Virus record (IMG/VR): IMGVR_UViG_3300047320_000285
Span: 189,741 to 253,740 of that record
Reading direction: 5' to 3' (one strand)
Length of the DNA: 64,000 bases
The notes beneath the pieces are model-generated. The model saw nothing but the letters and a program-made list of their open reading frames with translations, was not told the origin of the DNA and did no database searches. The position numbers and the translations under genes are program-made. Shown in pieces: positions 12,373 through 56,587 of this stretch; position 1 is the stretch's first letter; each line of letters starts with the position of its first letter.

Positions 12373-12446
12373 TTAGTCTGTCCTCAGTACGAGATCGATA
12401 GAAACCGTTGTCGAGGACCCCGTAAGGGGCCCCCAGCCTTCGGACG

Positions 12447-28689: not shown

Positions 28690-28750
28690 GATAGCCTCCT
28701 AGAAAGAAACAAACCTATATCATTCTCATGAGAAAACTACAGGAGTAGCC

Positions 28751-29380
28751 ATGGCGACGAAGCATTATTTCCTCTCGTTCGAAGAACGGGTGGACGAAGT
28801 AACGAAGCGAGGATGGCCAGAGGAGTACGCGCAGCTCTGGTGGAAGAAATACTACGGACATCTAACAAGCGCGGTCTATCGCGGTACCAGCTCTGAGCTA
28901 ACGTTTGGAGACTATCTGGATAAGATCCTTGAGGCAGGGATTAAGATCCCAGAGCAAGTCTCAAAATACGCAGCTGGGTATGTGCTTGGTCGCTACACTG
29001 ACGAGGGTTCTTATACGGTCGATAGCTGTCGGTTCATTACGCAGCTGGAGAATACTCACGAGGCAATCAAGAATGGTCGTTGGGAGAATGTCTGGAAGAT
29101 CGTAGGCGATGTTCGTCGCGGTCAGACTAAAGAGACGCTTGCTTTTCTCGCGAAGATGGCTGAAACCAAACGAGGCCGAACTGCAGAAACCCATGCAGGC
29201 ATAGCGATTCAGGCTGACAAGATTGCTCGTGACTTTGCTTTCCAAGCACCTGATGGCACAGTCTATCGTGGTCGAAACCTGAAGAAGTTTTGTCGCGAGC
29301 ACAATCTGAATTCCGGTAACATGAACCAATTGTTGCTTGGTAGGAGGGACTCAGTCAAAGGCTGGAAACGTGTGCCGTAG
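28751..29380 (+). mobile_element. Free-standing HNH-like homing endonuclease gene with C-terminal DNA-binding module, 209 aa
   Basis: LTFGDY, LGRYTDEGSY..DSCRFI...EN, G.TKET repeats, APDG...FCREH.L...KGW; more A/T-ending codons than its neighbours. Confidence 0.7.
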
Positions 29381-29393
29381 ATTTTTTCAACCC

Positions 29394-29401
29394 TATATTA
29401 C
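29394..29401 (+). promoter_or_regulatory. Putative early promoter TATATTAC
   Basis: Exact phiKZ early consensus, preceded by a T-run. Confidence 0.6.
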
Positions 29402-29475
29402 CCAACTGTAATAGCACCAGCAATCACGTTGATGCGTTACCATCCCTTACATTTCCTTTATACTGGAGCTTCATC

Positions 29476-30285
29476 ATGACGACCGCCGCTAATGCTCAAG
29501 ACACGAACAATACGAACAATGCCGCTAAGGCGACGATGGCTGACAAGCTCAAAGCCATGGGTGCGATTCCCCCGATCCAACTGGAAGCCAAGCACGGCGA
29601 CCTGTTCGGTCAACTGTTCTTCGGTACCGCCAAGCGCGCCCTCGGTGGCGAATGTGGCGATGTGCTGGCCACCGCATACGCGGAGCGCACCGTGATGGAC
29701 AAGACGATGTACTACGCCGAAGGCACGGTGGATGCTGTGAAAGACGGCGCCGTCTCAGCTTACACGACCGCCAAGGAAATCGTGGTCGACGGCTACGACA
29801 CCGTCAAGGGTTGGGTGTCAGGCTCGGCCAAGGAAGACGCCAAGAAGAAGGTGGCGGACGACGCTGAGGCTGAGAAGAACAACCAAGCGAACGTCAACCG
29901 CGCTCGCTTCGAGAAGCACTTCGACCAGATCGAAAAGACGGTTGAGTACAACGCGAAGTGGGAAAATGGCACCGGTTACTTCAACCATCTGGTGACCAAC
30001 AAGGATCTGCAAACGAGCCTGAACATCGGTGAGATGGCCAAGTGCACGGATCCGCACGGTCGCAAGATGATCATCATGCAAACCTCGCTGGGTCTGCTGG
30101 TGGTGTTCGCTCGCCATGTCGATGAGAAGACTTCGTTCCGCGTGAATGCGGACAAGGACCTTATCAAGGAAATCGAAGGCTTCAAGGAAGAGTGCACCGA
30201 CAGCGTGCTGAGCGCGAAGGGCTTCGACATCATCTTCGGCGAAGCGGATAACTTCACGCTCGCCCAGAAGCTGATGCAGGCATAA
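29476..30285 (+). CDS. Hypothetical protein, probably early, 269 aa
   Basis: SD ggag; strong codon bias; follows TATATTAC. Confidence 0.75.
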   Translation: MTTAANAQDTNNTNNAAKATMADKLKAMGAIPPIQLEAKHGDLFGQLFFGTAKRALGGECGDVLATAYAERTVMDKTMYYAEGTVDAVKDGAVSAYTTAKEIVVDGYDTVKGWVSGSAKEDAKKKVADDAEAEKNNQANVNRARFEKHFDQIEKTVEYNAKWENGTGYFNHLVTNKDLQTSLNIGEMAKCTDPHGRKMIIMQTSLGLLVVFARHVDEKTSFRVNADKDLIKEIEGFKEECTDSVLSAKGFDIIFGEADNFTLAQKLMQA

Positions 30286-30340
30286 ACGCAGGGAGCCCAA
30301 TGGTGGGCTCCTTGTCTCAATCTGATTCAAGGAGCTTATC

Positions 30341-30739
30341 ATGGAAAACTTCACCCTGCTGCAAGCCGCCCTCACGCAACTCAATGCTAAGGACGGTCTG
30401 CCGGTCGACTTCAAAGGCCAGATGGTCCTGTACCGCCTCACAGTGGTCGATGCGGAATTCGTCAAGATCGAAGGCTTTGTGCCCCAATCGGGTACGGGTG
30501 CGTCGGTCAATGTCGCCCAGGACTTCAAGCAAGGCACCCTGTGGATCGCGCCGCAGAACGTGGCCCTTGATGATTATGTCCGTTGCCACGACGGGCTGGC
30601 CAGCAAACTGGTCCGCCTGAACACGCCGTTTCGCGAACACCGCTTTGAGGAGTTTGACATCCTCGAAGACCGCCCGGTGTTCGGCCTGCTGCTCCCGATC
30701 GAGTCCGCTGCCCTCTCCCAAGAGGTGGCGCTCGCTTGA
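30341..30739 (+). CDS. Hypothetical protein, 132 aa
   Basis: SD aaggag. Confidence 0.65.
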   Translation: MENFTLLQAALTQLNAKDGLPVDFKGQMVLYRLTVVDAEFVKIEGFVPQSGTGASVNVAQDFKQGTLWIAPQNVALDDYVRCHDGLASKLVRLNTPFREHRFEEFDILEDRPVFGLLLPIESAALSQEVALA

Positions 30740-30836
30740 CGGAGCAGTGGGCGGGGCTCCCTATGGGGGGCCTTTAATTTTTTCTCTTCATGCACCACAG
30801 TGTGTAAGACAAACACTAACAAGGAGTAATACAGCC

Positions 30837-31841
30837 ATGTCCGACGTTCTCACCCAAGCTAAGCGCAATGTGCTCATCATTGGCTGCGGCGGTGGCGGTA
30901 CCAACATCTCGTATAACCTCGAGAAGCTGCGCAACAGCAACGAACTCGGTTTTGCTACGGCCGAGATCGTCTACGTCGACGCGTCGCGCTCGAACATGCG
31001 TGCTGACATTCCGGCCAAAGCGGTCTACCTGATCGACGGCCTCGACGGCTCCGGCAAGGTGCGCTCGGAGAATCACAGCGAAATCGGTCTGCGGGTGAAA
31101 GACATCCTGCAGCGTTTCCGTCCGGGCGATCTGGTGATCGTGATTTCGACGCTGGCAGGTGGCACCGGTTCGGTGATCAGCCCGTTGCTGGTCAAGGAAC
31201 TGCTGATGCGCGGGATTCCGACTATCGTGATCGGCGTGGGTGACACCACCACCCGGCTCGACACCGAGAACACACTCAAGTCGATCCAGTCGTTCGAGCA
31301 CATCGCGAAGAAGGCCGACGTGCCGGTGGTGATGCAGTATCTGGAAAACAGCGAACGCAACTCGCGCGCGGAAATCGACAAGCAGGTCAAGCAGATGGTC
31401 GGCTCGCTGTGCTCGTTGTTCTCGGGCGAAAACCGCGAACTGGACAGCAAAGACCTGTTCAACTTCCTGAACTTCAGCAACCCGAAGGTCACGACGTATC
31501 AGGCACAACTGGCGACGCTGCATCTGCTGGGTCGCGACGACGATTTCAACGGCTTGGGCAATATCATCTCGGTGGCCTCGCTGCTGTCCGAAGGTGAAGC
31601 GTTCAGCCTGCCGGTGCGTCCGGAATACGCGACCTACGGTTATCAGCCGCGTGGTGTGAACGAAACGGTGGCCAAGGGTGCGCCCTACCACTTCGTGATC
31701 GCCGACGGCGTGGTGCCGGAAGTGGTGAGCGAGCTGGAGAAAATCATCGGCACGCTCAACGAGCAGCAAGAAGCTCGTCTGTCGCGTCGATCCATTCTGG
31801 GTTCGGCCGCTCGTCCTGACGAGTCCGGTCTGATTCTGTAA
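30837..31841 (+). CDS. phuZ: Phage tubulin PhuZ, 334 aa
   Basis: IGCGGGGTNI, DGSGKVRSEN, STLAGGTGS, ELDSKDL and acidic-hydrophobic C-terminal tail; SD aaggag. Confidence 0.95.
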   Translation: MSDVLTQAKRNVLIIGCGGGGTNISYNLEKLRNSNELGFATAEIVYVDASRSNMRADIPAKAVYLIDGLDGSGKVRSENHSEIGLRVKDILQRFRPGDLVIVISTLAGGTGSVISPLLVKELLMRGIPTIVIGVGDTTTRLDTENTLKSIQSFEHIAKKADVPVVMQYLENSERNSRAEIDKQVKQMVGSLCSLFSGENRELDSKDLFNFLNFSNPKVTTYQAQLATLHLLGRDDDFNGLGNIISVASLLSEGEAFSLPVRPEYATYGYQPRGVNETVAKGAPYHFVIADGVVPEVVSELEKIIGTLNEQQEARLSRRSILGSAARPDESGLIL

Positions 31842-31849
31842 AGGAACTG

Positions 31850-32528
31850 CTATGGGGCTGCGCCTTGTGTCGCTCGCCGCCGCGATTTGCACCGGCTTCG
31901 CACACGCGTTTAACGCGAGTTCGTGGAAGGTGGTCGCGGCGTCGACGGCATGGAACAGGGCTCAGCGTGACGAACCCGGACCTGGAATCGCTTCTGGGCA
32001 AACCGGGATCAGCCGGGGTCGCCAGTCAAGTGATGGCTGGCGCTTCGCACAACGCGTCCCGAGGAGGACTGTGGCACGGGTTAAGGGTATCCGTCAGCCG
32101 CAGTTAGCTTGACTCGGCGCGATGGTCTCGCGAAGAACCCAACTACCTCTGGGGCTGCACTGCCGAACCGAGCCGCGTCGGGGGAGCATCAGGTGTGGCG
32201 CCCAGCTGGGCACGTTGAGCTAACTCTCTTTCCACCAGAGAGTGATGAAACATGAAATGGCCTGCCACCGCCGGTGAGCAGACGGACGAAGCACTTCAGG
32301 GTTAGATGGGACCGTAAGCCGCGTGACGTATTAGCCCATGGGACTAGCGTACGGGAGCCGAGAGCCGCCGGAATCGCCTGCAAGGCACGAAGTCCAAGGT
32401 ATCCGCTACTTAGATGAGACCTAGTCCGCCCCCGGTTTCCGGGTCAGCCGCTAGGAGATTCGTAAGGGCGGGCCTTCAAGAACCTCTTGCTTCGGCAGGG
32501 GGTAGTCTTGAAGGCCCGTTTTTCTTTT
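31850..32528 (+). ncRNA. Candidate large structured non-coding RNA 1 (about 0.67 kb)
   Basis: Many nested helices (31857-31966 domain; 32102-32113/32214-32225 12 bp; 32341-32347/32421-32427) ending in a strong terminator; no credible CDS. Confidence 0.6.
32470..32528 (+). terminator. Compound intrinsic terminator closing candidate ncRNA 1
   Basis: gggccttcaaga-acctcttgc-ttcg-gcagggggt-ag-tcttgaaggccc followed by a T-run. Confidence 0.85.
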
Positions 32529-32538
32529 AGGAGTTTTC

Positions 32539-33048
32539 ATGTCACGTCGTTATCACCACCCACCCTTTAGCGAACACCAGCTGAGCAATGCGGTGGGCGC
32601 GTTCAAGACGTGGGATGATCAGATCAAGAACCACGGTCAGATCCTGTCGGTCGAAGATCTGGTCCACCGGATCGCTGAATGTCTGTTTGAGGAAGTCGAT
32701 CTGAACCCCAAACCGGATCGACTGGTGTATCTGTCCTCGCCTTACAATCACCCCGATCCCGAGGTGAAGGAAAAGCGTCGTAAGGCCGCCTGTAGCGCCG
32801 CTGGTTATCTGATCGAGCGCGGTATCCCGGTTCACTCACCGATCGCCCACAACGCCGCGATTCTGGAGCAAACGAGTGGCAAGAGTGGGTGGGAGATCTG
32901 GAAGCCGCAGGATCTGGCGCTGCTTAAGGCCAGCACGGAAATGGTGATTCTGTGTCTGCCGGGTTGGGAAGCCTCTGAAGGGATTCGGGGTGAGTTCCAC
33001 GCCGCCATGGAGATGGGTAAGCCCGTGAGCTATATGCGAGCTGATTAA
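32539..33048 (+). CDS. DUF1937 / nucleoside 2-deoxyribosyltransferase-like protein, 169 aa
   Basis: VYLSSPY, VHSPIAH, W...D..LL, LPGWEASEGIRGEF..A...GKPV pattern. Confidence 0.75.
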   Translation: MSRRYHHPPFSEHQLSNAVGAFKTWDDQIKNHGQILSVEDLVHRIAECLFEEVDLNPKPDRLVYLSSPYNHPDPEVKEKRRKAACSAAGYLIERGIPVHSPIAHNAAILEQTSGKSGWEIWKPQDLALLKASTEMVILCLPGWEASEGIRGEFHAAMEMGKPVSYMRAD

Positions 33049-33135
33049 CTGGGTCCGGCCCGTGTGGCCGGGCTTTATGCCCCTGTGTGTGATTTCTTAC
33101 ATAGGCAACAAATACTGTGTATAGGGGACACCACT

Positions 33136-33495
33136 ATGATCCGATCTTACATAAACGACGCGCCACGAGCGTTGCTGATTCAGGATGTGCACGAGCTACG
33201 CGCCGAGTTCCGGTTGTTGTGGCAGGAGATGGCTGACTACGATATCGACGAACACGAGGTACTGGAGTGGATTATCGCCAACTGGTTGCGTGAGCGTCAT
33301 CATCTGCTTGTCTGGGACCACAACCCGCACAGCCCGACCATGCATGCCATCAAGAACTTCCTGCGTGAATTCACGGCTTTCCCCTTAAACCAGTTGCTTG
33401 AGAAATATATCATCGCACCTGTTCTGTATAAGGGCTGTCGAGACATCACCTTGGATTTGCGTGGCGTCGACCTGTACCTCTGGTACTTCAAATAA
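33136..33495 (+). CDS. Hypothetical protein, paralog array member 1
   Basis: SD gggga; C-terminal RGVDLYL. Confidence 0.7.
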   Translation: MIRSYINDAPRALLIQDVHELRAEFRLLWQEMADYDIDEHEVLEWIIANWLRERHHLLVWDHNPHSPTMHAIKNFLREFTAFPLNQLLEKYIIAPVLYKGCRDITLDLRGVDLYLWYFK

Positions 33496-33523
33496 CACGT
33501 CGCAATTTACGAGAACTAACCAC

Positions 33524-34363
33524 ATGGAAGTGACCAAAACCATGATGATCGACATCGCTGACCTGTCACGGTCACTCGATGCGGGCATCGGCGAATACTT
33601 GAGACCGGAAGAAACAGGCTGGTACCTGCCTTACGATCTCGAACCCACACTGAAGGAAGGTCGGCCCTACTACGTCCATACGGCCAACCGGGGTCTGACC
33701 AAGGTCGAGCTGATTACGGCCCCCAAGGGCGTGGATGTCTACGACCAGCATGCGGACATTATCGTCACTGCGGAACAGACGCGGGCCTTAAAAGAGCGCT
33801 CGTATCCGCATCCGGCGCGGGCTATCAAGCTGCTCAAAGCCTGCGCTAATCATCTGGTCGACATCCACGCGGCATGGGGCGGTATCTACGAAGAGCAGCA
33901 TCGGCGTGAGACGCAAGAGCGTGGCGAGGCCAACGCAGGCTACAGTACCATCCGTAAGCAGGTCGAGGAAGTGCTCGACGAATACGGTTTGCTGGAACTG
34001 GCCAAGATCGATGAGTCACGCATGCACCCCTCTCAGGTGCATTACCTGAAAGAACGTGCCAAGCAGCTGCGTAAGCTGCCGAGCAAGGAAGTGCGCCGGG
34101 ATGAGGCCCGCAATCCAGCCAATCTGAATGCCATCATTGCGGAATTCGTCTATCCGCAGTATGAAGGGCAAGATGATATTTTGACCATGATCGAGGATCA
34201 TCTGCTGGACTTTAAAACAACAATCCTCGATTTCTTGGGTAAAGACAAATGGATCATGCATTTTCTCAAGGTCTCTCGTGGCTCGCTGATCGTCGAGAAG
34301 ACGGTGGACTATCGGATTTATTCGTGGATGGTGGAACACGGGTATTGGGACCGCAGCCACTGA
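33524..34363 (+). CDS. Conserved phiKZ-like hypothetical protein, array member 2 (longer), 279 aa
   Basis: WYLPYD, C-terminal RGSLIVEKTVDYRI. Confidence 0.7.
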   Translation: MEVTKTMMIDIADLSRSLDAGIGEYLRPEETGWYLPYDLEPTLKEGRPYYVHTANRGLTKVELITAPKGVDVYDQHADIIVTAEQTRALKERSYPHPARAIKLLKACANHLVDIHAAWGGIYEEQHRRETQERGEANAGYSTIRKQVEEVLDEYGLLELAKIDESRMHPSQVHYLKERAKQLRKLPSKEVRRDEARNPANLNAIIAEFVYPQYEGQDDILTMIEDHLLDFKTTILDFLGKDKWIMHFLKVSRGSLIVEKTVDYRIYSWMVEHGYWDRSH

Positions 34364-34425
34364 ACGCGTCAGAAGCAGCAGCCCCCAAGAATCTGCGCCC
34401 CGGCTACATTCCGGAGTCAATGGAC

Positions 34426-34833
34426 ATGAAGACATGGTTGGTGAGTTTGCGGGACTGCTACGCGACGCTGCAATACGGCTTGCTGGATTACGTGGTGCAG
34501 CATAAAGCCCGCATGCGGGTGCTCGATCCCAATCAGTGGGTCCGGGAAGTCGATCTGAATCCGATCATGTCCACCATTCTGGACTATGTATTTCTGGAGA
34601 AGATCGGTAAAGAGCCGTTCGACTTCGACGCCCTGATTATCCCGAAGCTGCAGGATCTCAGGGTGCCGATGGATGTCGGTCTGCCGCTGGTCCACGAGGT
34701 GGTCATGTACGTGGTCTCGACCATTGGTAACATCTTCCCAGAGATGTACTTTGGTCCCGACGTACGGATCAGCTACGAGATCGTCAGCGGCAATGACTTG
34801 TGGATCAGCACCACGAAAGACCCAGTGGACTGA
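34426..34833 (+). CDS. Hypothetical protein, array member 3
   Basis: SD ggag; C-terminal SGNDLWI. Confidence 0.65.
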   Translation: MKTWLVSLRDCYATLQYGLLDYVVQHKARMRVLDPNQWVREVDLNPIMSTILDYVFLEKIGKEPFDFDALIIPKLQDLRVPMDVGLPLVHEVVMYVVSTIGNIFPEMYFGPDVRISYEIVSGNDLWISTTKDPVD

Positions 34834-34860
34834 GCCACGATTATACAAGGAAGGATGCAC

Positions 34861-35319
34861 ATGGCCAATGCGCTTATATTGCCGACGTTTGAACTGGTGA
34901 CAGAGTGCTTGCCCTACGACAAAGTCTTCGCCAAGTTTTTACGGGGCGGCGTGAAAGATGTGGTGCGCGAGTCGATTGTCGGGCAAACGTTCTATCGACG
35001 GCACCAACCGCTGATCGACCCGAGTAACAACCGCTCAGGACTGATGGCGTCAATTCTGCACACGTTCGACGAGTATTGCATTCAGGAGTGGGGGGATGCG
35101 CACATGGAGCCGGGTACCAGCTTCATGGACGAGTACCTCGCCCAGTTTGCGATCATCGAGTTCGTGGTGCAGGAAGTCGAAGAGGGGGTGGAAAACATGC
35201 TGTACCACATCCTGCGTGCGCAACACATGCGTACGTTCGACGTCGATGAGTTCGAAACTCAGTGGCGGGGTCGAGACCTGATGGTCTATTTGAAATCGCT
35301 GAACCGGATAAGGAGCTAA
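34861..35319 (+). CDS. Hypothetical protein, array member 4
   Basis: SD aggaagg; C-terminal WRGRDLMV. Confidence 0.7.
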   Translation: MANALILPTFELVTECLPYDKVFAKFLRGGVKDVVRESIVGQTFYRRHQPLIDPSNNRSGLMASILHTFDEYCIQEWGDAHMEPGTSFMDEYLAQFAIIEFVVQEVEEGVENMLYHILRAQHMRTFDVDEFETQWRGRDLMVYLKSLNRIRS

Positions 35320-35321
35320 TG

Positions 35322-35858
35322 ATGCTGCCACGTGTCGTGATTATGGAAGTCGGAGAAGAGGTCAGCGAGTTCTTGGAAGCGATTCAGGCTGAGGATTTGC
35401 CGACCATCGATTTGGCTGCTGTCATGGATCAGGTGGTAGCGTGCGTGAATCATCCGGACGATCCGAAAGACGACCATGAGACCCTGGCACTGGTGGCCGG
35501 GTATATGGCGTATGGGGAAGGCCTACACGAAGGCCCCATTGATTTGACCGATGGTTGGTCCCCGCAACAGAAAAGTGGTGTGTTCGATGCGGTGATGCAG
35601 CTCGGTTGGCGCATGCGCTACCGCATCGCGGACCTCGGACTCGTACAGGAAGATCGGCGTTTCTTTAGCCATCGATTTAAGGAGATAGAGCGTGACCATA
35701 TTCTCAGGCTCGAACAAGACCAAGATACGCCTACCACCGTCACGACAGTCGTTAGTGCCGCTCCGCGTCATTGGCCCCGTGAACCCCGCGCAACCGACTC
35801 GCCTCATTTTGCCGACGTCGGACTTTATCAGCAAGTTTCAACGCGATGGTCTGCGTGA
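35322..35858 (+). CDS. Hypothetical protein, array member 5
   Basis: SD aggag; TAATG overlap with the previous gene. Confidence 0.65.
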   Translation: MLPRVVIMEVGEEVSEFLEAIQAEDLPTIDLAAVMDQVVACVNHPDDPKDDHETLALVAGYMAYGEGLHEGPIDLTDGWSPQQKSGVFDAVMQLGWRMRYRIADLGLVQEDRRFFSHRFKEIERDHILRLEQDQDTPTTVTTVVSAAPRHWPREPRATDSPHFADVGLYQQVSTRWSA

Positions 35859-36165
35859 AGACTTCGATTTTGAACCGGGGGACCGGTTCATCACCGATCT
35901 CTTTGAGCAGCTGACCTACGAACAGGACGCCCTCTTGATGCTCGGTGTGTATGCTGAAGAGATCGCGTACGACGTCACCTGTGGTCTGGAAGCTGAACGC
36001 CTAGTACGCCACATCGTTTATCTGGGCACGCAGATTCATCAGTTGCTTCAGTTACTGAAGGTGTATCAGCGCGGTTATCTGTTTCACCAGTTCGTCCAGT
36101 GGTGGGGTGCCGACATCATGGTGGGGGACTTCCGTTTGCTGGACATGGAACCGGAGGACCACTGA
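35779..36165 (+). CDS. Hypothetical protein, array member 6 (start uncertain; overlaps previous ORF)
   Basis: PTRLILPTSDF N-terminal motif; C-terminal WWGADIMV; TGATG overlap with the next gene. Confidence 0.55.
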   Translation: MNPAQPTRLILPTSDFISKFQRDGLREDFDFEPGDRFITDLFEQLTYEQDALLMLGVYAEEIAYDVTCGLEAERLVRHIVYLGTQIHQLLQLLKVYQRGYLFHQFVQWWGADIMVGDFRLLDMEPEDH

Positions 36166-36569
36166 TGCAAGGCGAGCAGCAGTATCCGAAGAGTATTATC
36201 GTCGGCACCCGTGACATCATGCGGCAGTTCGAGCAGGAGACACGGGGCTTGCCGCTGAAGCCACAGGACTTCACCGAAATCATCACGCAGGTCTTGGATC
36301 TGCTGTTGAACTTCGGCCCGGATGCCTGTGGCAGCTATCAGGCTTTACCCGACGTCAGTCGTCTGGTAAAGAATGAATGGGTGGAAGACGAACAGTTGGT
36401 GCGACTGAAAAACGCCAGCTTTCGCTTAGCGTGGGCCGTCCACAATCAGTGCGAGGCCTTGGGCTTTCGCACTTTCCGTCAGGACGACGGCTCGGTCAAG
36501 CGGGACTTCCCGTATGCGATCAGTGGCTGGCATGGTGGTGACGTGGTGTTGGATCATATGCCCTTCTAA
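36165..36569 (+). CDS. Hypothetical protein, array member 7
   Basis: SD ggagg; C-terminal WHGGDVVL. Confidence 0.7.
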   Translation: MQGEQQYPKSIIVGTRDIMRQFEQETRGLPLKPQDFTEIITQVLDLLLNFGPDACGSYQALPDVSRLVKNEWVEDEQLVRLKNASFRLAWAVHNQCEALGFRTFRQDDGSVKRDFPYAISGWHGGDVVLDHMPF

Positions 36570-36595
36570 ACGCCTCGTCTTCGGGCGGGGCGTTT
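36568..36595 (+). terminator. Hairpin terminator
   Basis: aaacgcctcgtc-ttcg-ggcggggcgttt. Confidence 0.6.
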
Positions 36596-36622
36596 GTCCA
36601 ACACTTCTTTTTTGGTTCCGCC

Positions 36623-37033
36623 ATGACCTACAACTACCAGATTGGGGCGACGTATTCGTTCAATACGTACGCGCCGAGTGTACTCGGCAACGACTACCAG
36701 AATGTCAAGATGCTTGGTGTGCTGTCAGCCGATCTGGCCAGCCGCTTGGGTTGCGATATTCAGTCGCTGCAGCAAAAAGTCTTCCCGCAGGTGCCGCCGC
36801 AGAATCACATGTCGACGGACCCCACGCAGTACAACTACATTCAAGTGCAGCTGCAGAACGGTTCCCGCACCATTCTGGGCATGCCATGGATTGACGAGTC
36901 GTCGATTGTAGCCGTCACCGGTCAAACCATTACGGCGATTATCGGTAACGTCACCGCCGATGATCTGTCGGTGATTCGTGACTCGTTGTCGATGAACGGG
37001 TACACCCAAGTCACGCTGACCATCAGTGATTAA
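36623..37033 (+). CDS. Conserved phiKZ-like protein upstream of DNA polymerase (gp49-like), 136 aa
   Basis: Synteny; start MTYNYQIGATYSF. Confidence 0.65.
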   Translation: MTYNYQIGATYSFNTYAPSVLGNDYQNVKMLGVLSADLASRLGCDIQSLQQKVFPQVPPQNHMSTDPTQYNYIQVQLQNGSRTILGMPWIDESSIVAVTGQTITAIIGNVTADDLSVIRDSLSMNGYTQVTLTISD

Positions 37034-37061
37034 GCGGGCCTAAAGAGGTTACCAGTAAAAA

Positions 37062-37079
37062 TTACAGGCACTCTCCATG
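37062..37079 (+). promoter_or_regulatory. Putative nvRNAP promoter TTAC-N10-CATG driving candidate ncRNA 2
   Basis: aaaaattac-aggcactctc-catg. Confidence 0.45.
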
Positions 37080-37494
37080 AAGTGCACAGGGACCGGCACT
37101 CCCTGACGCGTTACACGAACGATTTCCTCCGCATGTCTCTCGCGTCCCGTTTGTGTAGTGCGATTAAACTTCCCACTGGGATTCTGCAGCTGGCGCGCAT
37201 GCGCCGCACGCGGAAGGGAAGAGTGCTGAGCGGGGGTGGCTTGCTAACGGTACGTTTTGCTCTCCTTGTACGACTCCGTTTCATCCACATGAGTGGCGAG
37301 TGCACGATGCTATTGCGCCAAGGCTGCGCTTAGGTCGTCCCCGGCATTCGGATGACAGGTCACCCCCTGCTCTTTTTTAGCCCAGCCGAGTTCTCGTAGT
37401 CTCCTCGTAGCACCAGTGCAAGGCCAGTAGTCCGTGTTGTATCTTGTCACGCAATCCTGAATTTAAGCGAGGACTTCGGTCCTCGCCTTTTTTT
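37079..37494 (+). ncRNA. Candidate large structured non-coding RNA 2 (about 0.42 kb) with a predicted pseudoknot
   Basis: Interleaved helices 37105-110/37141-146 and 37112-120/37149-157; 13-bp helix 37228-240/37359-372; terminator 37467-37494; no credible CDS. Confidence 0.6.
37467..37494 (+). terminator. Intrinsic terminator
   Basis: gcgaggac-ttcg-gtcctcgc-c-T7. Confidence 0.85.
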
Positions 37495-37547
37495 CCCTTT
37501 ATGCCTTTGCGTCAACGATTTGAGAAAATATTGGAGGTCCCAATTGT

Positions 37548-39755
37548 GTGCCAGCGTACATAGAGACGTCGCCACAGAACCAACAAAACAGGATCATCAG
37601 CGCCATGACACAGAATCCGTTTGTCCTGCCTTGGACCGAATACAAGCGGGATATTAACGTGCTGAGGGATTATATCGACGATCAGGCTCGTTATCTGTCG
37701 ATCGAAACCCAACAGCCCTACGAAGTCTGCGAGGCCTTCGTGAAAGAGCAGCTGCGCCCCGGCGGCCAGTTTGAATTCAAAGATCCGCGCTGCCTGTACA
37801 CGGAGCGTGGCGAGAACGGTGACCGGGAGCTAAAAGAAGGTCGCCTGTCGCAGTACTTGCATGAAGCGGTGCATCACGAACGCATGATTGCTCCGTCGCT
37901 CACCACGTATCTAAACCCCGAGCAAGAGCCAGCGTTGCTGGTTGACTTTATCGACGATAACGTCAAGGGTCGGTCGGTCGCGAAGAAAGCCATGTTCGCC
38001 GCACGCCGCGAAGGCAACAAGGTGATGGACAGTATTTACAACAACGAGCAGAACAACCGCAAGTTGTCAAATAATTCCATCTCAGGCGCGCACTTGTCGG
38101 CGGGTCAACCGCTTTACAACAAGACCGCCCACATTACCCTGACCAGTAACTGCCGCTCGACCTCCGGATTCGGCAATGCGAATAACGAGAAGCTGCTCTC
38201 GGGTAATCGCCACTACTGGTCGGTCCAGATTACGCTGAACAACATTATCTCGATCGTCAACCATACCGACTATGATCAGTTGGGGGCAGCGTGTGCGGAG
38301 TACGGCATTCGCTACCCGAGCTTTGATGAGACGATGGAATGCATCCAGTACTCGACCAACCTCTATTGGGCTGATCGTCGCTCGATGGACAAAGTCCGGT
38401 CGCTAGTGGAAAAGTTGACCCCGATCCAACGTGCTGCATTCGTCTATACCGGTGACCTCTACCACCTGATGCGCTTCAATGAGCAACTGGTGCGTGAATT
38501 TATCACCCGTATGTCGTACAAACCGACCGAACCGCATCCTGATCCGGAGTCCGTGATTAAGGCAGCCCCCGAAGATGTGGTCTTCACCGCCGTGCAAATC
38601 TGCGAAGAGCACTTTCGGGGCGTGGGTCCGGATGGCAAAAACATCGACTGGAAGAAGATGGTCGGGACCCGCGAGTACGGGATCTTGGGCGCTACGGTCG
38701 CTAACATCCAGTCGACCTTGGCGGTGTACTTCAACATGATCCGGGCGCTGTGGGTCACGCCGAATGTCCCGGCTTCGCTCGCATGGTTTCCGGATTCGAT
38801 TCGCCGCGCAGCCCTCACGTCCGACACGGACTCGACCATCTTTACCGTGCAGGACTGGATCGAGTGGTACTTTGGTGAGATCAAGGTGGATGCGGCTTCG
38901 AACGGCGTCGCCGCGGTGTTCATCTATTTCTCGTCTGCGTCTATCGTGCACATCCTCGCCCGGATGTCGGCGAACTTTGGGATTAAGGGTGAAAAGCGCC
39001 TGTTCCAGATTGCGATGAAGAACGAGTACAAGTTTGATGTATTCGTGCCCACGCAGGTGGCCAAGCACTACTTCGCGTTGATTGGCTGTCAGGAAGGCGA
39101 TCTCTACGCCAAGTACAAGAAAGAGATCAAGGGGGTGCATCTGAAGTCCTCCAACGCCCCGATCGAAGTCACCAAGAGCGCGGAAGACCTGATGCTCGAC
39201 ATCATGAACCGGGTCCTGAAAGGCCAGAAAATCAGCCTGACCAAGATCCTGCTCGATCTGGCCAACCGGGAACGACAGGTGATGGAGTCGATCGTCCGTG
39301 GCGACAGTCGCTTCTTCCGCAAGGGGCAGATCAAACCCCCGGAGTCCTACACCAAGGCAGCGGACGAAAGCCCGTATATCCAGTACGAAATGTGGCAAGA
39401 AGTCTTTGCCCCGGATTACGGGGATATTCCGCCGCCGCCGTACGTGTGCGTACGCATTGCCACCAGTGCCGATACCCCGGGCAAGTGCAAGGAGTGGCTG
39501 GATGGCTTGGAGAATCAGGCCTTTGCCAATCGCATGCGCAACTGGATGGTACGCAATAACAAGAAGTACATCGGCTCGATCCAGTTGCCCGAGCAGATGG
39601 TGTCCAGTAAAGGCGTCCCCAAAGAGATCCTGCAGATTGCGGGGGCTCGGCAAATTGTGCGTGATACCACCGGCGTGTTTTATCTGATTCTGGAAGCCTT
39701 GGGGTTCTTCATGCTCGACGACAAGATCTCGCGTCTGGCCATGGATCTCTACTAA
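37548..39755 (+). CDS. Family-B DNA polymerase, polymerase-domain subunit (phiKZ gp50-like), 735 aa; start may be 37605
   Basis: RKLSNNSISG (motif B), AALTSDTDSTIF (motif C), AKHYFA, KGVHLKSS. Confidence 0.9.
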   Translation: MPAYIETSPQNQQNRIISAMTQNPFVLPWTEYKRDINVLRDYIDDQARYLSIETQQPYEVCEAFVKEQLRPGGQFEFKDPRCLYTERGENGDRELKEGRLSQYLHEAVHHERMIAPSLTTYLNPEQEPALLVDFIDDNVKGRSVAKKAMFAARREGNKVMDSIYNNEQNNRKLSNNSISGAHLSAGQPLYNKTAHITLTSNCRSTSGFGNANNEKLLSGNRHYWSVQITLNNIISIVNHTDYDQLGAACAEYGIRYPSFDETMECIQYSTNLYWADRRSMDKVRSLVEKLTPIQRAAFVYTGDLYHLMRFNEQLVREFITRMSYKPTEPHPDPESVIKAAPEDVVFTAVQICEEHFRGVGPDGKNIDWKKMVGTREYGILGATVANIQSTLAVYFNMIRALWVTPNVPASLAWFPDSIRRAALTSDTDSTIFTVQDWIEWYFGEIKVDAASNGVAAVFIYFSSASIVHILARMSANFGIKGEKRLFQIAMKNEYKFDVFVPTQVAKHYFALIGCQEGDLYAKYKKEIKGVHLKSSNAPIEVTKSAEDLMLDIMNRVLKGQKISLTKILLDLANRERQVMESIVRGDSRFFRKGQIKPPESYTKAADESPYIQYEMWQEVFAPDYGDIPPPPYVCVRIATSADTPGKCKEWLDGLENQAFANRMRNWMVRNNKKYIGSIQLPEQMVSSKGVPKEILQIAGARQIVRDTTGVFYLILEALGFFMLDDKISRLAMDLY

Positions 39756-39853
39756 ACGGTTGCAGCGTCTCATCGTTATGAGTGGGGCTTCGGCCCTGCT
39801 CATTAGCACAACACCTACGATTAGACCTTGGAACAACTTGGGGGTAGTACCTT

Positions 39854-40132
39854 ATGGATTTCGAACTGGAGATGCAACATGCGAAAATGCTCGTGGCATT
39901 AGTGGAGACTGGCCCCTTGCATCAGCAGGAACTCGGTGACGCCCTGACCCGGGAAGCACTGATACGGCACGGACTGGCATCGAAGATTGTGTTCGACGGA
40001 GAACAGAACTTTATCGCCGCCACGTATCTGGGCAGTAGTATTTACTGCAAGAAGATTGTCGGGGAAGACATCTTGCAGCATGCGATTCAAAAACGCAAGA
40101 AGCAGGGTGAAGTTGCGAGGCTCGCGAGATAG
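39854..40132 (+). CDS. Small hypothetical protein, 92 aa
   Basis: Fills the gap between polymerase and the convergent terminator. Confidence 0.55.
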   Translation: MDFELEMQHAKMLVALVETGPLHQQELGDALTREALIRHGLASKIVFDGEQNFIAATYLGSSIYCKKIVGEDILQHAIQKRKKQGEVARLAR

Positions 40133-40151
40133 GGACCCAACAATAACTACT

Positions 40152-40203
40152 GGCATAAAAGCCGGGTGAGACGTGCTCACCCGGCCCTTCAGCCTTTATG
40201 CCG
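40152..40203. terminator. Bidirectional terminator with GGCATAAAA/TTTATGCCG foot
   Basis: gccgggtgag-acgtg-ctcacccggc flanked by the motif. Confidence 0.7.
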
Positions 40204-41302
40204 TAATCCGGCTGGCAATCCCATCCAGTTCCAGCTCCACGTCACTGTACAGCTCGGCGGGTAGCAGGTTGCGGAAGAGATTGCTATTCTGGTACATACG
40301 AATCGTTTGCCTGAGTCGGTTGATTTCCTGACCGTTCTTGGCCATCCCGCTATTAATGCCGGTACGGGTCAGAAAGTCAATCGCCGGAAAGCGCGCCAGC
40401 CCCAAGGCCCAGACGACCTGACGGGTCGCAGCCATCTGTGGCACACTCATCACCCCCTGCATATTGGGCTGATCCACGGCCGGGATATTGAACAACGTCT
40501 CCCCAAACGACTTGGTGACCCGATGCAGGTTATTCAATAGCGTGCTCTGGGTCGCATTGAGTTTCTGGCTGAAGTCGGTCACATAGAACGGATGCTTCTT
40601 CAGGGGTCCGCCCATCGGTGCCCCTTTGGCCAGATTGTTAATCCGGTTAAACAGCACGTAATCCAGATGACTGGGCAGCATGTTGGGCAACACGTACATG
40701 TGGACAAACTGATTGATGCTGCGCGGTGACTCATCGTACAGTTGCGACAGATATTGCTCCCGTTGCCAGAAACTGCGATACTGCACCAGCAACATCGGCA
40801 CGTTGATCGCAATCACGGCGACGCCTTCTTCCGCCCCGGTCTTGGTCCCATCGGGTAGCAGTAACTCCAGATCACTGCGAGGATGGCGCAAGACCCGGAC
40901 CGGTCGTAGATGCTCCCAGTGTTTCTCGGCTTCAAACGGATCGAAGTCCGCCGTGTGAGCAATCAGGATCTCGTCACAGCCGGGCCCGTAGAAGGTCCCT
41001 TTAAATGGATGGCCGGAGGATAACGAGGACGTCATCTTCAGCGCCATGCTGAGGTTGAGCGAGAACAGGCCATCGACGTTATCGTAATAGCGCTCGATCG
41101 GCATGCTTTTGCCCACGGTGCTCGATTGCAGCAGGCGGATAATAAAGTGGTCGGACGCCACCGCCATGGGCGCGCGGCGATAATATCGCATCACCTGTTC
41201 CAGATTCTTCTGGAGCCCGGTATGCAGGTAGTTCCAATTCGCGGCATACACTTTACCGGGACTGGCAGTCAGGTCGAAGTCAAAGATCTGGTACATACGC
41301 AC
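40196..41302 (-). CDS. Conserved virion structural protein (phiKZ gp52-like), 368 aa
   Basis: Opposite-strand gene between DNA polymerase and the gp53-chimallin block, as in phiKZ. Confidence 0.65.
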   Translation of the reverse strand: MRMYQIFDFDLTASPGKVYAANWNYLHTGLQKNLEQVMRYYRRAPMAVASDHFIIRLLQSSTVGKSMPIERYYDNVDGLFSLNLSMALKMTSSLSSGHPFKGTFYGPGCDEILIAHTADFDPFEAEKHWEHLRPVRVLRHPRSDLELLLPDGTKTGAEEGVAVIAINVPMLLVQYRSFWQREQYLSQLYDESPRSINQFVHMYVLPNMLPSHLDYVLFNRINNLAKGAPMGGPLKKHPFYVTDFSQKLNATQSTLLNNLHRVTKSFGETLFNIPAVDQPNMQGVMSVPQMAATRQVVWALGLARFPAIDFLTRTGINSGMAKNGQEINRLRQTIRMYQNSNLFRNLLPAELYSDVELELDGIASRITA

Positions 41303-42312: not shown

Positions 42313-42332
42313 CGTCGTCGTTCTGTAAATTT

Positions 42333-42351
42333 TTACACAGCGATCCCTATG
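42333..42351 (+). promoter_or_regulatory. Putative nvRNAP promoter TTAC-N11-TATG
   Basis: aaatttttac-acagcgatccc-tatg. Confidence 0.45.
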
Positions 42352-42453
42352 GTATAGGAAGGACTACATCGCCTTCCAAACTCGACCACGTGACAGGCGG
42401 GGTCGGGGTAGGCAGTCATGATGTTGTCCTATTCCGTTGAAGAGATTTGAGGG

Positions 42454-43098: not shown

Positions 43099-43170
43099 TC
43101 TCTTAGTGCGGGACATGGAAATCGCACACTACACGTGTATTGTGAAACTATTTCAGAACAAGGAATGATC

Positions 43171-56464: not shown

Positions 56465-56587
56465 AGTACGCCCTTATTTGCTTTATTGAAAAACAATCAC
56501 ATATCATCAAAAGGAGCAGGTTGTCGCCCAGATAACTGTGTTCAGGATAGACGAGAATCAATGACACTGTATTACAAGGAGAACTAA

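What the first reader, a model, noticed from the sequence alone, without database searches (positions are those of the whole stretch)
31850..37494. Possible module: two large ncRNAs bracketing an NDT-like enzyme and a paralog array, between phuZ and DNA polymerase
The layout is phuZ - ncRNA1 - DUF1937/NDT-like - about 7 diverged paralogs - gp49-like - ncRNA2 - DNA polymerase. Both RNAs carry a short GC stem capped by a self-complementary sequence (gcccagctgggc at 32200-32211; gcgcatgcgc at 37195-37204), suited to kissing-loop dimerisation, and share short words (tgcaaggc, tagtccg). If the small paralogs bind these RNAs, this could be an undescribed ribonucleoprotein system of the phage nucleus or spindle. 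The linkage is inferred from position only.
Basis: inference. Interest (0 to 1): 0.6.

Follow-up and report, generated by a model that had tools for sequence, protein, structure and literature searches.

The report
Two structured RNAs in jumbo phage
Two long gene-free stretches flanking a conserved gene block in a soil jumbo phage are real, conserved, highly folded RNA elements that match no catalogued RNA family, but nothing ties them to the neighbouring genes as one machine.

Summary
The layout is as described: phuZ, a 697-nt spacer, a DUF1937/NDT-like gene, seven small ORFs, an SH3DP (gp49-like) gene, a 571-nt spacer, then DNA polymerase (true start ATG 37605).

Both spacers occur at the same positions and similar lengths in 10-11 related contigs from two clades, including Burkholderia phage FLC9. 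They are as conserved as the flanking genes and show strong conserved folding with many compensatory pairs on the + strand. Each ends in an intrinsic terminator. Neither matches Rfam.

- The first ~45 codons of spacer 1 are a small ORF under purifying selection.
- The palindromic loops and shared words are not conserved.
- The NDT-like gene is a sporadic insert.
- The array-gp49-polymerase block also exists in phiKZ, RP12 and Xanthomonas phages that lack the big RNAs.
- Only three array genes are proven paralogs; a fourth is likely.

So the RNAs are real, and the "module/RNP" link is unsupported.

New lead: RNA2's most conserved feature is a hairpin loop, CUCCUUGU. It is complementary to ACAAGGAG, the commonest extended ribosome-binding site in this phage (phuZ and two RNA polymerase subunits among others). 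There are no expression data.

The parts
30819..30826 (+). phuZ ribosome-binding site ACAAGGAG, perfectly complementary to the RNA2 loop
   Evidence: The same 8-mer precedes phuZ in L003, L004 and L005.
30837..31841 (+). phuZ (phage tubulin)
   Evidence: phrog_4733 E 4e-78. Pfam Tubulin and TubZ_C_2 fall just under their cut-offs. 100% identical to P0001.
31852..32112 (+). Small ORF (86 codons). It has an SD 6-10 nt upstream and an ATG invariant in 10 sequences. The N-terminal ~45 codons are conserved; the Arg-rich tail is unconstrained.
   Evidence: In the FLC9 clade, dN/dS is 0.18-0.43 in this frame only, with third-position excess. No Pfam or PHROG match.
31854..32463 (+). RNA1 structured body. 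Long 5' hairpin 31857-31966 (overlaps the small ORF); hairpins 31981-31998 and 32014-32047; domain 32102-32225; domain 32284-32395; hairpin 32420-32455.
   Evidence: RNAalifold z -17.2 (W clade) and -13.7 (FLC9 clade) against column shuffles. 54 of 186 pairs are compensatory, against 22.8+-3.4 permuted. Helix list.
32073..32099 (+). RNA1 hairpin with near-invariant loop UUAAGGG (32081-32087). The stem covaries across both clades.
   Evidence: ACGGGU/AUCCGU, AUGCGU/GCGCAU, GCCGAU/AUCGGU, GCGAGC/GCUCGU.
32262..32281 (+). RNA1 near-invariant hairpin CUGCCACC-NNN-GGUGAGCAG (bulged A, 3-nt loop). This motif retrieved all homologues.
32200..32211 (+). Not conserved in relatives.
32464..32523 (+). 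RNA1 long terminator hairpin (27 bp, UUCG loop) followed by a U run
32539..33048 (+). DUF1937 / nucleoside 2-deoxyribosyltransferase-like gene. An accessory insert, present only in W, L003 and L005.
   Evidence: PDB 1t1j, E 1.7e-10.
33050..33081 (+). GC hairpin followed directly by TTTATGCC (33074-33081): a terminator plus TATG-type promoter unit that opens the array operon
   Evidence: 30 such units in the genome, ~5 expected. TATG late-promoter motif in PMC4666361.
33136..34833 (+). Three conserved small genes (about 33136-33495, 33524-34363, and ORF 34249-34833 with an uncertain start). Two have orthologues in the FLC9 clade. No detectable paralogy.
34855..35319 (+). Array gene, probably the same fold as the next three
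   Evidence: AF2 pLDDT 62.8, same order of strands and helices. 14 of its top 50 BFVD targets are shared with the 36165 gene's list.
35319..36569 (+). Three consecutive paralogous genes (35319-35858; ORF 35692-36165 with an uncertain start; 36165-36569)
   Evidence: hhalign 94.7%, E 5.8e-8. Iterative HMM links all three. AF2 pLDDT 76.5. The fold is shared with many uncharacterised jumbo-phage proteins and has no PDB match.
36623..37033 (+). SH3DP (phiKZ gp49-like)
   Evidence: PF20287 E 2.7e-34; phrog_3235.
37054..37068 (+). Conserved AT-rich element AGTAAAAATTACAGG at the 5' edge of RNA2. It resembles the phiKZ middle-promoter element AAanTTACc.
   Evidence: PMC4666361. Sequence resemblance only.
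37080..37466 (+). RNA2 structured body. Hairpin with CCGG-containing loop 37088-37105; hairpin 37109-37160; hairpin 37169-37221; long-range domain 37228-37372.
   Evidence: RNAalifold z -10.0 (W clade) and -6.7 (FLC9 clade). 39 of 138 pairs are compensatory, against 17.5+-2.9 permuted. Cross-clade covarying helix UGGCUUG/CAGGUCA. Helix list.
37262..37269 (+). RNA2 apical loop motif CUCCUUGU (anti-Shine-Dalgarno-like). Conserved in three clades inside hairpins whose stems differ.
37195..37204 (+). The hairpin is kept in relatives; the palindromic loop is not.
37467..37497 (+). RNA2 intrinsic terminator (stem covaries, 5 of 9 pairs)
37498..37604 (+). TTTATGCC promoter motif (37498-37505) and the conserved 5' UTR of the DNA polymerase gene
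37605..39755 (+). Divergent family-B DNA polymerase (divDNApol)
   Evidence: (PF20286 on orthologues).

Best explanation
The window holds two separate, non-homologous, large structured RNA elements. They are not one module with the genes between them.

RNA1 (about 31852-32523) is the 3' part of the phuZ transcript. A small ORF starts 10 nt after the phuZ stop codon. About 500 nt of conserved multi-domain RNA follows, closed by a long terminator.

RNA2 (about 37054/37080-37497) follows the gp49-like gene. It begins at an AT-rich element resembling a phiKZ-type middle promoter and ends in a terminator. A TATG-type promoter for the DNA polymerase gene comes straight after.

Shown here: conservation in two clades, conserved folding, compensatory pairs, a + strand preference, and absence from Rfam.

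Inferred: both accumulate as stable RNAs and act at the RNA level. For RNA2 the most likely mechanism is antisense masking of ribosome-binding sites. Its invariant apical loop CUCCUUGU (up to UCUCCUUGUA) can pair with the extended site (U)ACAAGGAG(A). About 16 phage genes use that site, among them phuZ, two RNA polymerase beta-like subunits and, in the FLC9 clade, the DNA polymerase. For RNA1 the likely reading is a dual-function transcript: a small basic peptide plus a protein-binding RNA scaffold built around the invariant bulged hairpin at 32262-32281. Its target is unknown.

The NDT-like gene is an accessory insert. The small-gene array is a pan-family syntenic block that does not depend on the RNAs.
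For: Same-place spacers of 665-776 nt and 540-582 nt occur in 10-11 contigs whose PhuZ is 43-82% identical. Nucleotide identity to the three closest relatives is 64-68% for RNA1 and 70-77% for RNA2, against 64-82% for flanking genes.

Consensus folding energy against re-folded column shuffles:
- RNA1: -196 vs -95+-6 (z -17) in the W clade; z -13.7 in the FLC9 clade.
- RNA2: -131 vs -75+-6 (z -10) in the W clade; z -6.7 in the FLC9 clade.
- The + strand is more stable than the - strand in all four comparisons.

Compensatory pairs: 54 of 186 for RNA1 and 39 of 138 for RNA2. Permuted partners give 23+-3 and 17.5+-3. Slid partners give 5-12. Helices with different sequences in the two clades sit at identical alignment columns.

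No codon periodicity appears beyond the first ~45-60 codons of RNA1.

The CUCCUUGU loop lies in hairpins with unrelated stems in three clades. ACAAGGAG precedes 16 of 61 RBS-like NNAAGGAG sites (binomial P 6e-7 from base composition). 16 of the 19 genomic copies are RBS-like, and several extend to 10 nt of complementarity. Genes carrying it include phuZ and two RNAP beta-like subunits. In all FLC9-clade loci it is the DNA polymerase RBS.

Precedent for UTR-derived phage ncRNAs in phiKZ: PMC8545117. Middle (AAanTTACc) and late (TATG) promoter motifs: PMC4666361.
Against: - There are no expression data. The only run holding this DNA is a rhizosphere metagenome, so the 5' ends, stability and independent transcription of either RNA are unproven.
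- Any pyrimidine loop resembling the 16S 3' end is complementary to Shine-Dalgarno sites. Only the flanking GU/AC (and UA/UA) extension is specific, and the ACAAGGAG bias could have another cause, such as a phage 5' UTR consensus.
- L007 keeps the loop but has no ACAAGGAG on the gene strand in the 21 kb held.
- Structures were predicted from the same alignments used to count covariation. Only 4-5 sequences per clade are available, and alignment between clades is poor outside anchor motifs.
- A covariance model built from the four W-clade sequences did not retrieve the FLC9-clade RNA2 core.
- The small ORF is only 24 codons in L006, and its coding signal is weak in the W clade (dN/dS about 0.7).
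Confidence: 0.6

Rival explanations
1. One reading: the two RNAs, the NDT-like enzyme and the paralog array form one ribonucleoprotein system of the phage nucleus or spindle. The small paralogs would bind the RNAs, and the RNAs would dimerise through palindromic kissing loops.
For: Adjacency is kept in all RNA-bearing relatives. The array proteins share a fold with no solved relative and no assigned function, so RNA binding cannot be excluded. RNA1 has a near-invariant bulged hairpin typical of protein-binding sites.
Against: - The array-gp49-polymerase synteny exists without the large RNAs in phiKZ, RP12, RTH11 and LucasX.
- The NDT-like gene is absent from L004 and the whole FLC9 clade.
- L007 has the RNA2 hairpin without RNA1.
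- The palindromes and shared words are not conserved.
- A terminator and a promoter separate each RNA from the next gene.
Confidence: 0.07
2. The elements are purely cis-acting 3' untranslated regions. They would be elaborate structured ends that protect the phuZ and array mRNAs from 3' exonucleases or tune termination, with no trans function.
For: Both lie directly downstream of coding genes and end in terminators. No terminator separates phuZ from RNA1. 3' UTR-derived species are known in phiKZ (PMC8545117).
Against: - 450-650 nt of multi-domain structure with invariant loops conserved over deep divergence is far more than stabilisation needs.
- Other operons in this genome end in simple 8-12 bp hairpins.
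- RNA2 begins with a conserved promoter-like element.
- Relatives with the same genes manage with 54-343 nt spacers.
Confidence: 0.2
3. The RNAs are self-assembling 'ornate' RNAs like ROOL or GOLLD, which form homo-oligomeric particles through loop-loop contacts.
For: Size, multi-domain architecture and phage origin fit. One RNA2 hairpin loop keeps a self-complementary tetranucleotide: CCGG in most sequences and GGCC in L005.
Against: No Rfam match to ROOL, GOLLD, OLE or raiA. The CCGG/GGCC change is a single event.
Confidence: 0.08
4. The spacers act as DNA, for example as a replication origin or packaging site next to the DNA polymerase gene, rather than as RNA.
For: RNA2 is adjacent to the polymerase gene. 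The - strand alignments also fold better than shuffles.
Against: - The + strand consensus is more stable in all four comparisons.
- G:U cells greatly outnumber A:C cells: 97:13 and 90:8. This is partly circular, because the fold was predicted on the + strand.
- GC is above the genome mean in RNA1 (0.61 vs 0.57) and there are no AT-rich unwinding blocks.
- No iterons or direct repeats were seen when reading the spacers and their alignments; the repeat finder and the tandem-repeat finder were not run.
- Terminators and promoters are oriented with the genes.
Confidence: 0.04
5. The spacers are decayed or unrecognised protein-coding genes.
For: Open frames of 74-119 codons exist at the 5' end of RNA1, with in-frame indels. 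A gene caller called a 118-aa product in L004.
Against: Beyond ~45-60 codons there is no third-position excess and dN/dS is about 1 in every frame. RNA2 has no frame conserved between relatives. Compensatory pair changes are unexplained by coding. No family match.
Confidence: 0.03

Closest known systems
UTR-derived non-coding RNAs of phage phiKZ (about 100-nt 3' UTR fragment of PHIKZ298; 180-nt 5' UTR fragment of p40), Gerovac et al. 2021, PMC8545117
   Same: Same phage lineage. The RNA lies at the end of an operon transcript and includes the intrinsic terminator. No separate gene is annotated.
   Different: The elements here are 4-6 times longer, multi-domain, and conserved with covariation across clades. 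They are at other loci and show no sequence relation. The phiKZ species were shown by Northern blot; these have no expression data.
Large 'ornate' bacterial and phage RNAs (GOLLD, ROOL, OLE, raiA; Rfam families). Named from my own knowledge of that literature.
   Same: Hundreds of nucleotides, many covarying helices, often phage-borne, function unknown or only recently glimpsed.
   Different: No match to any of the 4227 Rfam models, even at E up to 1-5. Not next to tRNAs. Restricted to one jumbo-phage subgroup. RNA1 carries a small ORF.
sRNAs that mask Shine-Dalgarno sites with C/U-rich apical loops (for example Staphylococcus RNAIII and Rsa RNAs), and the T4 RegB/RegA shut-off of early mRNAs at their ribosome-binding sites. 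Named from my own knowledge.
   Same: RNA2 shows a conserved pyrimidine loop complementary to the ribosome-binding sites of a set of genes. The logic would be temporal translational control of phage genes.
   Different: This rests on complementarity and motif enrichment only. RNA2 is much larger than typical sRNAs. No chaperone or nuclease partner is identified. T4 uses proteins, not an RNA.
Dual-function RNAs (RNAIII/hld, SgrS/SgrT) and arginine-rich peptides that bind hairpins (lambda N/boxB). Named from my own knowledge.
   Same: RNA1 combines a translated small ORF with a large structured RNA. The peptide tail is very basic, and the RNA has an invariant bulged hairpin.
   Different: Neither translation of the ORF nor any peptide-RNA contact was tested. 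The basic tail is not under purifying selection.
phi29 pRNA (packaging RNA that multimerises through loop-loop pairing). Named from my own knowledge.
   Different: No homology, different size and a different phage type. The proposed self-complementary loops are not conserved.

Membership tests
Any Rfam 15 family (including group I/II introns, GOLLD, ROOL, tmRNA, RNase P, 6S) | Covariance-model score at or near the family's gathering threshold | tested here: not met
   Window 29000-41000 at E up to 1 gave only a 16.7-bit sX6 fragment inside a gene. Four relatives at E up to 5 gave nothing in the spacers.
Conserved structured RNA (generic) | Consensus fold significantly more stable than shuffled alignments, with compensatory base changes | tested here: met
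   z -17.2 and -13.7 for RNA1, -10.0 and -6.7 for RNA2. 54 and 39 compensatory pairs in the W clade, against 23 and 17.5 in permutations and 5-12 when slid. Cross-clade covarying helices.
Conserved structured RNA (generic) | The transcript exists, with defined ends | not testable with these tools
   No RNA run holds the sequence.
Intrinsic (Rho-independent) terminator | GC-rich hairpin followed by a U run on the gene strand | tested here: met
   37467-37486 plus a T run. 32464-32523 is a long hairpin plus UUUUUCUUUU. Stems covary.
phiKZ-type late promoter | TATG motif with G as +1 (PMC4666361) | tested here: inconclusive
   TTTATGCC occurs 30 times against about 5 expected, nearly always just after a hairpin and upstream of genes. 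It occurs at 33074 and 37498 and is conserved in FLC9, RP12, RTH11 and LucasX. Promoter activity was not tested.
phiKZ-type middle promoter | AAanTTACc element about 24 nt upstream of the start site (PMC4666361) | tested here: inconclusive
   AAAAATTACAGG at 37057-37068 is conserved in the W clade, and AAATTTATCGGG in the FLC9 clade. Only about 4 similar sites exist in the genome, no more than chance. No start-site data.
Protein-coding small ORF | Purifying selection in one frame, start codon with SD | tested here: met
   Met for codons 1-45 in the FLC9 clade (dN/dS 0.18-0.43 against more than 1 in the other frames; third-position excess). Weak in the W clade (about 0.7). Not met beyond codon ~45. 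L006 has only 24 codons.
DUF1937 (PF09152) / nucleoside 2-deoxyribosyltransferase-like | Pfam score above the curated cut-off | tested here: met
   60.8 bits against 23. The Nuc_deoxyrib_tr model itself scores 21.2 against 28.8, which is not met. PDB 1t1j, E 1.7e-10. Catalytic residues not examined.
SH3DP (PF20287), phiKZ gp49-like | Pfam score above the cut-off and position next to the divergent DNA polymerase | tested here: met
   117.8 bits against 25. Matches phiKZ gp49 at 15979-16287 of L074.
PhuZ phage tubulin | Match to phage tubulin profiles | tested here: met
   phrog_4733 E 4.2e-78 over the full length. Pfam Tubulin 29.6/33 and TubZ_C_2 25.7/27 are just under their cut-offs.
Paralog array (one family for all seven small genes) | Detectable homology between the members | tested here: inconclusive
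   - Pairwise blastp finds nothing.
- Profiles link only the last three genes.
- A fourth shares the order of secondary-structure elements and 14 fold-search targets.
- Three remain unlinked, with hhalign probability below 2%.
SD-masking antisense riboregulator | Conserved single-stranded seed complementary to the ribosome-binding sites of target genes | tested here: met
   The loop CUCCUUGU is conserved in three clades. 8-10 nt perfect complements lie at 16 RBS-like sites.
SD-masking antisense riboregulator | Demonstrated pairing and effect on translation | not testable with these tools
   Needs reporter and compensatory-mutation experiments.

The most novel reading that the evidence does not exclude
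RNA2 is a phage-encoded anti-ribosome-binding-site riboregulator. It would be made from a middle-type promoter. Its invariant CUCCUUGU loop would pair with the extended (U)ACAAGGAG(A) sites of a regulon that includes phuZ and RNA polymerase subunits (and DNA polymerase in the FLC9 clade), switching their translation off or retiming it. That would be an RNA counterpart of the T4 RegA/RegB early shut-off. Separately, RNA1 would be a dual-function transcript whose small basic peptide binds its own invariant hairpin.
Probability: 0.2. Interest if true: 0.8.

Novelty: new variant of a known kind. Interest (0 to 1): 0.6.

Why it matters
Very few non-coding RNAs are known in phages; the phiKZ Grad-seq paper counts 21 (PMC8545117). 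A 2026 review of jumbo phages gives non-coding RNAs a single sentence (PMC13282480).

Here are two new families of large structured RNA, about 420-460 nt and 500-670 nt. They sit at fixed positions in the replication/spindle gene block of a nucleus-forming-type phage group that includes a cultured member, Burkholderia phage FLC9. That makes experiments possible.

One carries an embedded small ORF. The other displays an anti-Shine-Dalgarno-like loop matched to an over-represented phage ribosome-binding site. If that loop does control translation, it would be a new layer of temporal gene control in jumbo phages.

The work also shows that gene adjacency in this block is ancestral synteny and is not evidence of a shared machine.

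Tried and rejected
- **The search for related loci** with single PhuZ in IMG/VR found no relative. Relatives came instead from the word search plus contig look-ups and from an RNA1 motif scan.
- **RNA2 motif scan** of IMG/VR (TTGTCACGCAATNCTG) returned 50 loci. None was a true homologue by nhmmer.
- **Metagenome motif scan** added only one RNA1 homologue, L079.
- **Covariance model R1**, built from the four W-clade RNA2 cores, found only its own sequences and terminators. This held even with filters off on the FLC9-clade loci. Cross-clade homology of that domain therefore rests on MAFFT anchors and covarying helices only.
- **Homology between RNA1 and RNA2**: none by blastn or by the RNA1 and RNA2 profile HMMs, whose searches of the loci and whole genome also found no second copy of either RNA.
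- **The sigma-70 promoter scan** is uninformative for this phage type.
- **A recurrent promoter behind the AT-rich RNA2 5' motif**: only about 4 similar sites, no more than chance.
- **Expression**: the one run holding the DNA is a DNA metagenome.
- **Array protein function**: no Pfam or PHROG hit. The ESM Atlas gave nothing above chance. Foldseek against the PDB gave nothing with E <= 0.001.
- **Complex prediction** was not run, because no specific protein pair is claimed to bind.
- **Considered and rejected for the spacers**: intron (no Rfam hit, no split gene, a terminator inside); riboswitch or leader of the downstream gene (a terminator plus a promoter intervene); CsrA-type sponge (by eye and from base composition, GGA count about as expected; no script was run).

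Full report
**Setting.** The window is the last 64 kb of a single 253,740-bp contig with 57% GC. It comes from a rhizosphere metagenome. It is a nucleus-forming-type jumbo phage. Its nearest deposited relative is Burkholderia phage FLC9 (PhuZ 47%, gp49-like 49%, DNA polymerase 59% identity).

**Observation.**
- PhuZ, 30837-31841.
- A 697-nt gene-free stretch.
- A DUF1937/NDT-like gene, 32539-33048.
- Seven small ORFs.
- SH3DP (phiKZ gp49-like), 36623-37033.
- A second gene-free stretch.
- The divergent DNA polymerase.

Alignment with relatives shows that the polymerase starts at ATG 37605. The upstream GTG is out of frame or stopped in L003 and L004, so the second spacer is 571 nt. The quoted palindromes and words are at the stated coordinates. 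Rfam finds nothing in either spacer, here or in four relatives. There are no tRNAs.

**Relatives.** A word search with PhuZ found proteins of 82-34% identity. Contig look-ups gave three long relatives with the same layout: L003 (81%), L004 (70%) and L005 (65%). They also gave a contig end, L006, and a lower-GC relative, L007 (51%).

A near-invariant RNA1 motif retrieved five IMG/VR contigs and one metagenome contig, all of the FLC9 type.

In every contig that covers the positions, both spacers are present with similar lengths: 665-776 nt and 540-582 nt. W-clade identity to the window is 64-68% for spacer 1 and 70-77% for spacer 2. The flanking genes score 64-82%.

**Structure.** Consensus folding was compared with re-folded alignments whose columns were shuffled within conservation and gap classes:
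- RNA1 W clade: -196 vs -95+-6 kcal/mol (z -17.2).
- RNA1 FLC9 clade: z -13.7.
- RNA2 W clade: -131 vs -75+-6 (z -10.0).
- RNA2 FLC9 clade: z -6.7.

The reverse-complement alignments are less stable in all four cases.

Compensatory double changes:
- W clade: 54 of 186 pairs in RNA1 and 39 of 138 in RNA2. Permuted partners give 23+-3 and 17.5+-3.
- FLC9 clade: 47 of 216 and 22 of 124. Permuted partners give 22.5+-3.1 and 12.5+-2.1.
- Partners slid by one or two columns give 2-12 across all four sets.

G:U cells outnumber A:C cells by 97:13 and 90:8.

Two kinds of helix were predicted independently in both clades at identical alignment columns with different sequences. They are the RNA1 hairpin around the UUAAGGG loop and an RNA2 long-range helix, UGGCUUG/CAGGUCA, UGAUUCA/UGGGUCA, UGGCUUA/UAAGCUG.

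Single-sequence MFE z-scores are modest, -2.6 and -1.6. The evidence is comparative. Caveat: there are few sequences, and the folds were derived from the same alignments.

**Small ORF.** The ATG at 31852 is invariant in all ten sequences and has an SD-like purine run upstream. In the FLC9 clade the first ~45 codons show third-position excess (0.38 vs 0.08 and 0.00). They give dN/dS of 0.18-0.43 in this frame only. In the W clade the signal is weak, about 0.7.

The frame stays open for 74-119 codons. Beyond ~45 codons there is no purifying selection, and the same nucleotides form covarying hairpins. L006 has only 24 codons. FLC9's deposited annotation has no gene here. 'ncRNA1' is therefore a small-ORF-plus-RNA element.

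gcccagctgggc reads CATCAGTCGGGC, CAGCAGTCGGGC or otherwise in the closest relatives, and the segment is missing from the FLC9 clade. The hairpin holding gcgcatgcgc is kept through compensatory change, but its palindromic loop is not. tgcaaggc and tagtccg are not conserved in either RNA. The two RNAs are not homologous.

**Transcription units.** TTTATGCC occurs 30 times in the genome against about 5 expected. It almost always sits directly after a GC hairpin and upstream of a gene. The same hairpin-TATGCC unit precedes the polymerase gene in FLC9-type phages, RP12, RTH11 and LucasX. phiKZ late promoters are defined by TATG with G as +1 (PMC4666361).

Such units sit at 33074, after the NDT-like gene and opening the array operon, and at 37498, opening the polymerase gene. 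In relatives without the NDT-like gene, the unit follows the RNA1 terminator directly. The NDT-like gene is therefore an insert between terminator and promoter. It is present in only W, L003 and L005.

RNA1 has no terminator between it and phuZ, so it is most simply the 3' part of the phuZ transcript. RNA2 begins with a conserved AT-rich element (AGTAAAAATTACAGG; AGTTAAATTTATCGGG in the FLC9 clade). This resembles the phiKZ middle-promoter element AAanTTACc, so it may be its own transcript. This is resemblance only.

**Linkage test.** phiKZ has the same order, gp39 PhuZ, gp40-48, gp49, gp50 polymerase, with spacers of 54 and 201 nt.
- RP12: 124 nt after PhuZ, and 437 nt in the stretch before the polymerase gene.
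- RTH11: 186 and 343 nt.
- LucasX: 56 and 270 nt.

None matches the RNA profiles beyond the terminator-promoter unit. L007 has only a long terminator hairpin after phuZ, but it keeps the RNA2 signature hairpin. The array therefore does not need the RNAs, the RNAs do not need the NDT-like gene, and RNA2 can exist without RNA1.

**The array.**
- Orthologues of five of the seven genes lie in the same order in the FLC9 clade.
- blastp finds no paralogy.
- Profile comparison links the sixth and seventh genes: 94.7%, E 5.8e-8 over 127 columns.
- Iterative HMM searches within the held loci join the fifth to them. The rest stay unlinked.
- An AlphaFold model of the seventh gene (pLDDT 76.5) has one strand, four helices and a C-terminal sheet. 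It has no PDB match.
- The same model matches many uncharacterised proteins of jumbo phages, several per genome: four in RP12, three in Eowyn.
- The fourth gene's model is weaker (pLDDT 62.8). It has the same order of elements and shares 14 of its top 50 targets with the seventh gene's list.

This is a fast-evolving multi-copy family common to the whole phage group.

**New lead on RNA2.** Its most conserved feature is a hairpin whose stem differs completely between the W clade, the FLC9 clade and L007. Its loop always contains (C)UCCUUGU, flanked by U. That sequence resembles the anti-Shine-Dalgarno end of 16S rRNA.

Its complement, ACAAGGAG, is the commonest extended form of the ribosome-binding site in this genome. 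It accounts for 16 of 61 RBS-like NNAAGGAG sites (P 6e-7 from base composition). 16 of the 19 copies in the genome are RBS-like, and several match the loop and its flanks over 10 nt.

Genes with this site include phuZ, here and in L003-L005, and two RNA polymerase beta-like subunits. In all FLC9-clade loci it is the polymerase RBS.

The AC extension is not what pairing with a 16S 3' end would select. This step rests on my own knowledge of 16S sequences. I therefore propose that RNA2 masks these sites. This is inference from complementarity and enrichment only.

**Verdict.** The two spacers are real, conserved, structured RNA elements that match no Rfam family. Their functions are unknown but testable. 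The proposed RNP module, the kissing palindromes and the shared words are not supported. The paralog array is only partly supported.

Noticed in passing
Whole genome G000; in the window at e.g. 8245, 11453/11481, 24356, 27861, 30286, 33074, 37498, 40159/40195, 51420, 56067, 63446: GC hairpin followed at once by TTTATGCC: 30 copies against about 5 expected, on both strands. Probably combined terminator and TATG-type promoter units that punctuate the genome.
   Followed up: partly
window 37506-37604: The 5' UTR of the DNA polymerase gene is conserved (GGAGG, then GTGTGCCAGCG). In L003, L004 and L005 a short upstream ORF (MCQR...) ends in a stop overlapping or just past the polymerase ATG, which suggests translational coupling. 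In the window that frame has a TAG at codon 6, and the neighbouring GTG 37548 is instead in frame with the polymerase.
   Followed up: partly
L001 (FLC9, LC667451) locus 9054-9281 and 11870-12400: The deposited FLC9 annotation lacks the conserved small ORF after phuZ. It also places gp6 on the minus strand where a plus-strand orthologue of the window's 35319-35858 gene lies.
   Followed up: partly
window 46704, 51589, 53124, 56574, 58741 and 11 sites elsewhere in G000: A class of genes uses the extended ribosome-binding site (U)ACAAGGAG(A). It includes two RNA polymerase beta-like subunits (56588-58741, 58754-60796) and three conserved jumbo-phage proteins of unknown function.
   Followed up: partly
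window about 8256, 51516 and 56480-56520: AT-rich blocks containing CACATAT(T/C)A lie upstream of some genes, including one RNA polymerase subunit. These are possible early promoters reminiscent of the AT-rich early class described for phiKZ.
   Followed up: no
L007 15333-17981: In this lower-GC relative the stretch between the gp49-like gene and the polymerase is 2.6 kb. It holds the RNA2-like hairpin, a tRNA-Asn (16114-16190), an HNH_3 fragment and several small ORFs.
   Followed up: partly
L075 15451-15793 and L076 15266-15535 (Xanthomonas phages RTH11 and LucasX): Their shorter gp49-polymerase spacers share conserved blocks with each other (e.g. GTAGACGACAC.GGCGG.TG.CGTCTAA, ATGGTTCTCGATT.CCCAG). 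This may be a smaller non-coding element at the same position.
   Followed up: no
L005 11702-12046: The DUF1937 gene of L005 is only 114 codons. It lacks the 55-residue N-terminal extension present in the window and in L003.
   Followed up: no
window 25335-26028, 28579-29475, 42313-43134: Other stretches of 690-900 nt were left uncovered by a crude codon-usage gene finder. Their GC is below the genome mean (0.45-0.49). They were not examined for small genes or RNAs.
   Followed up: no
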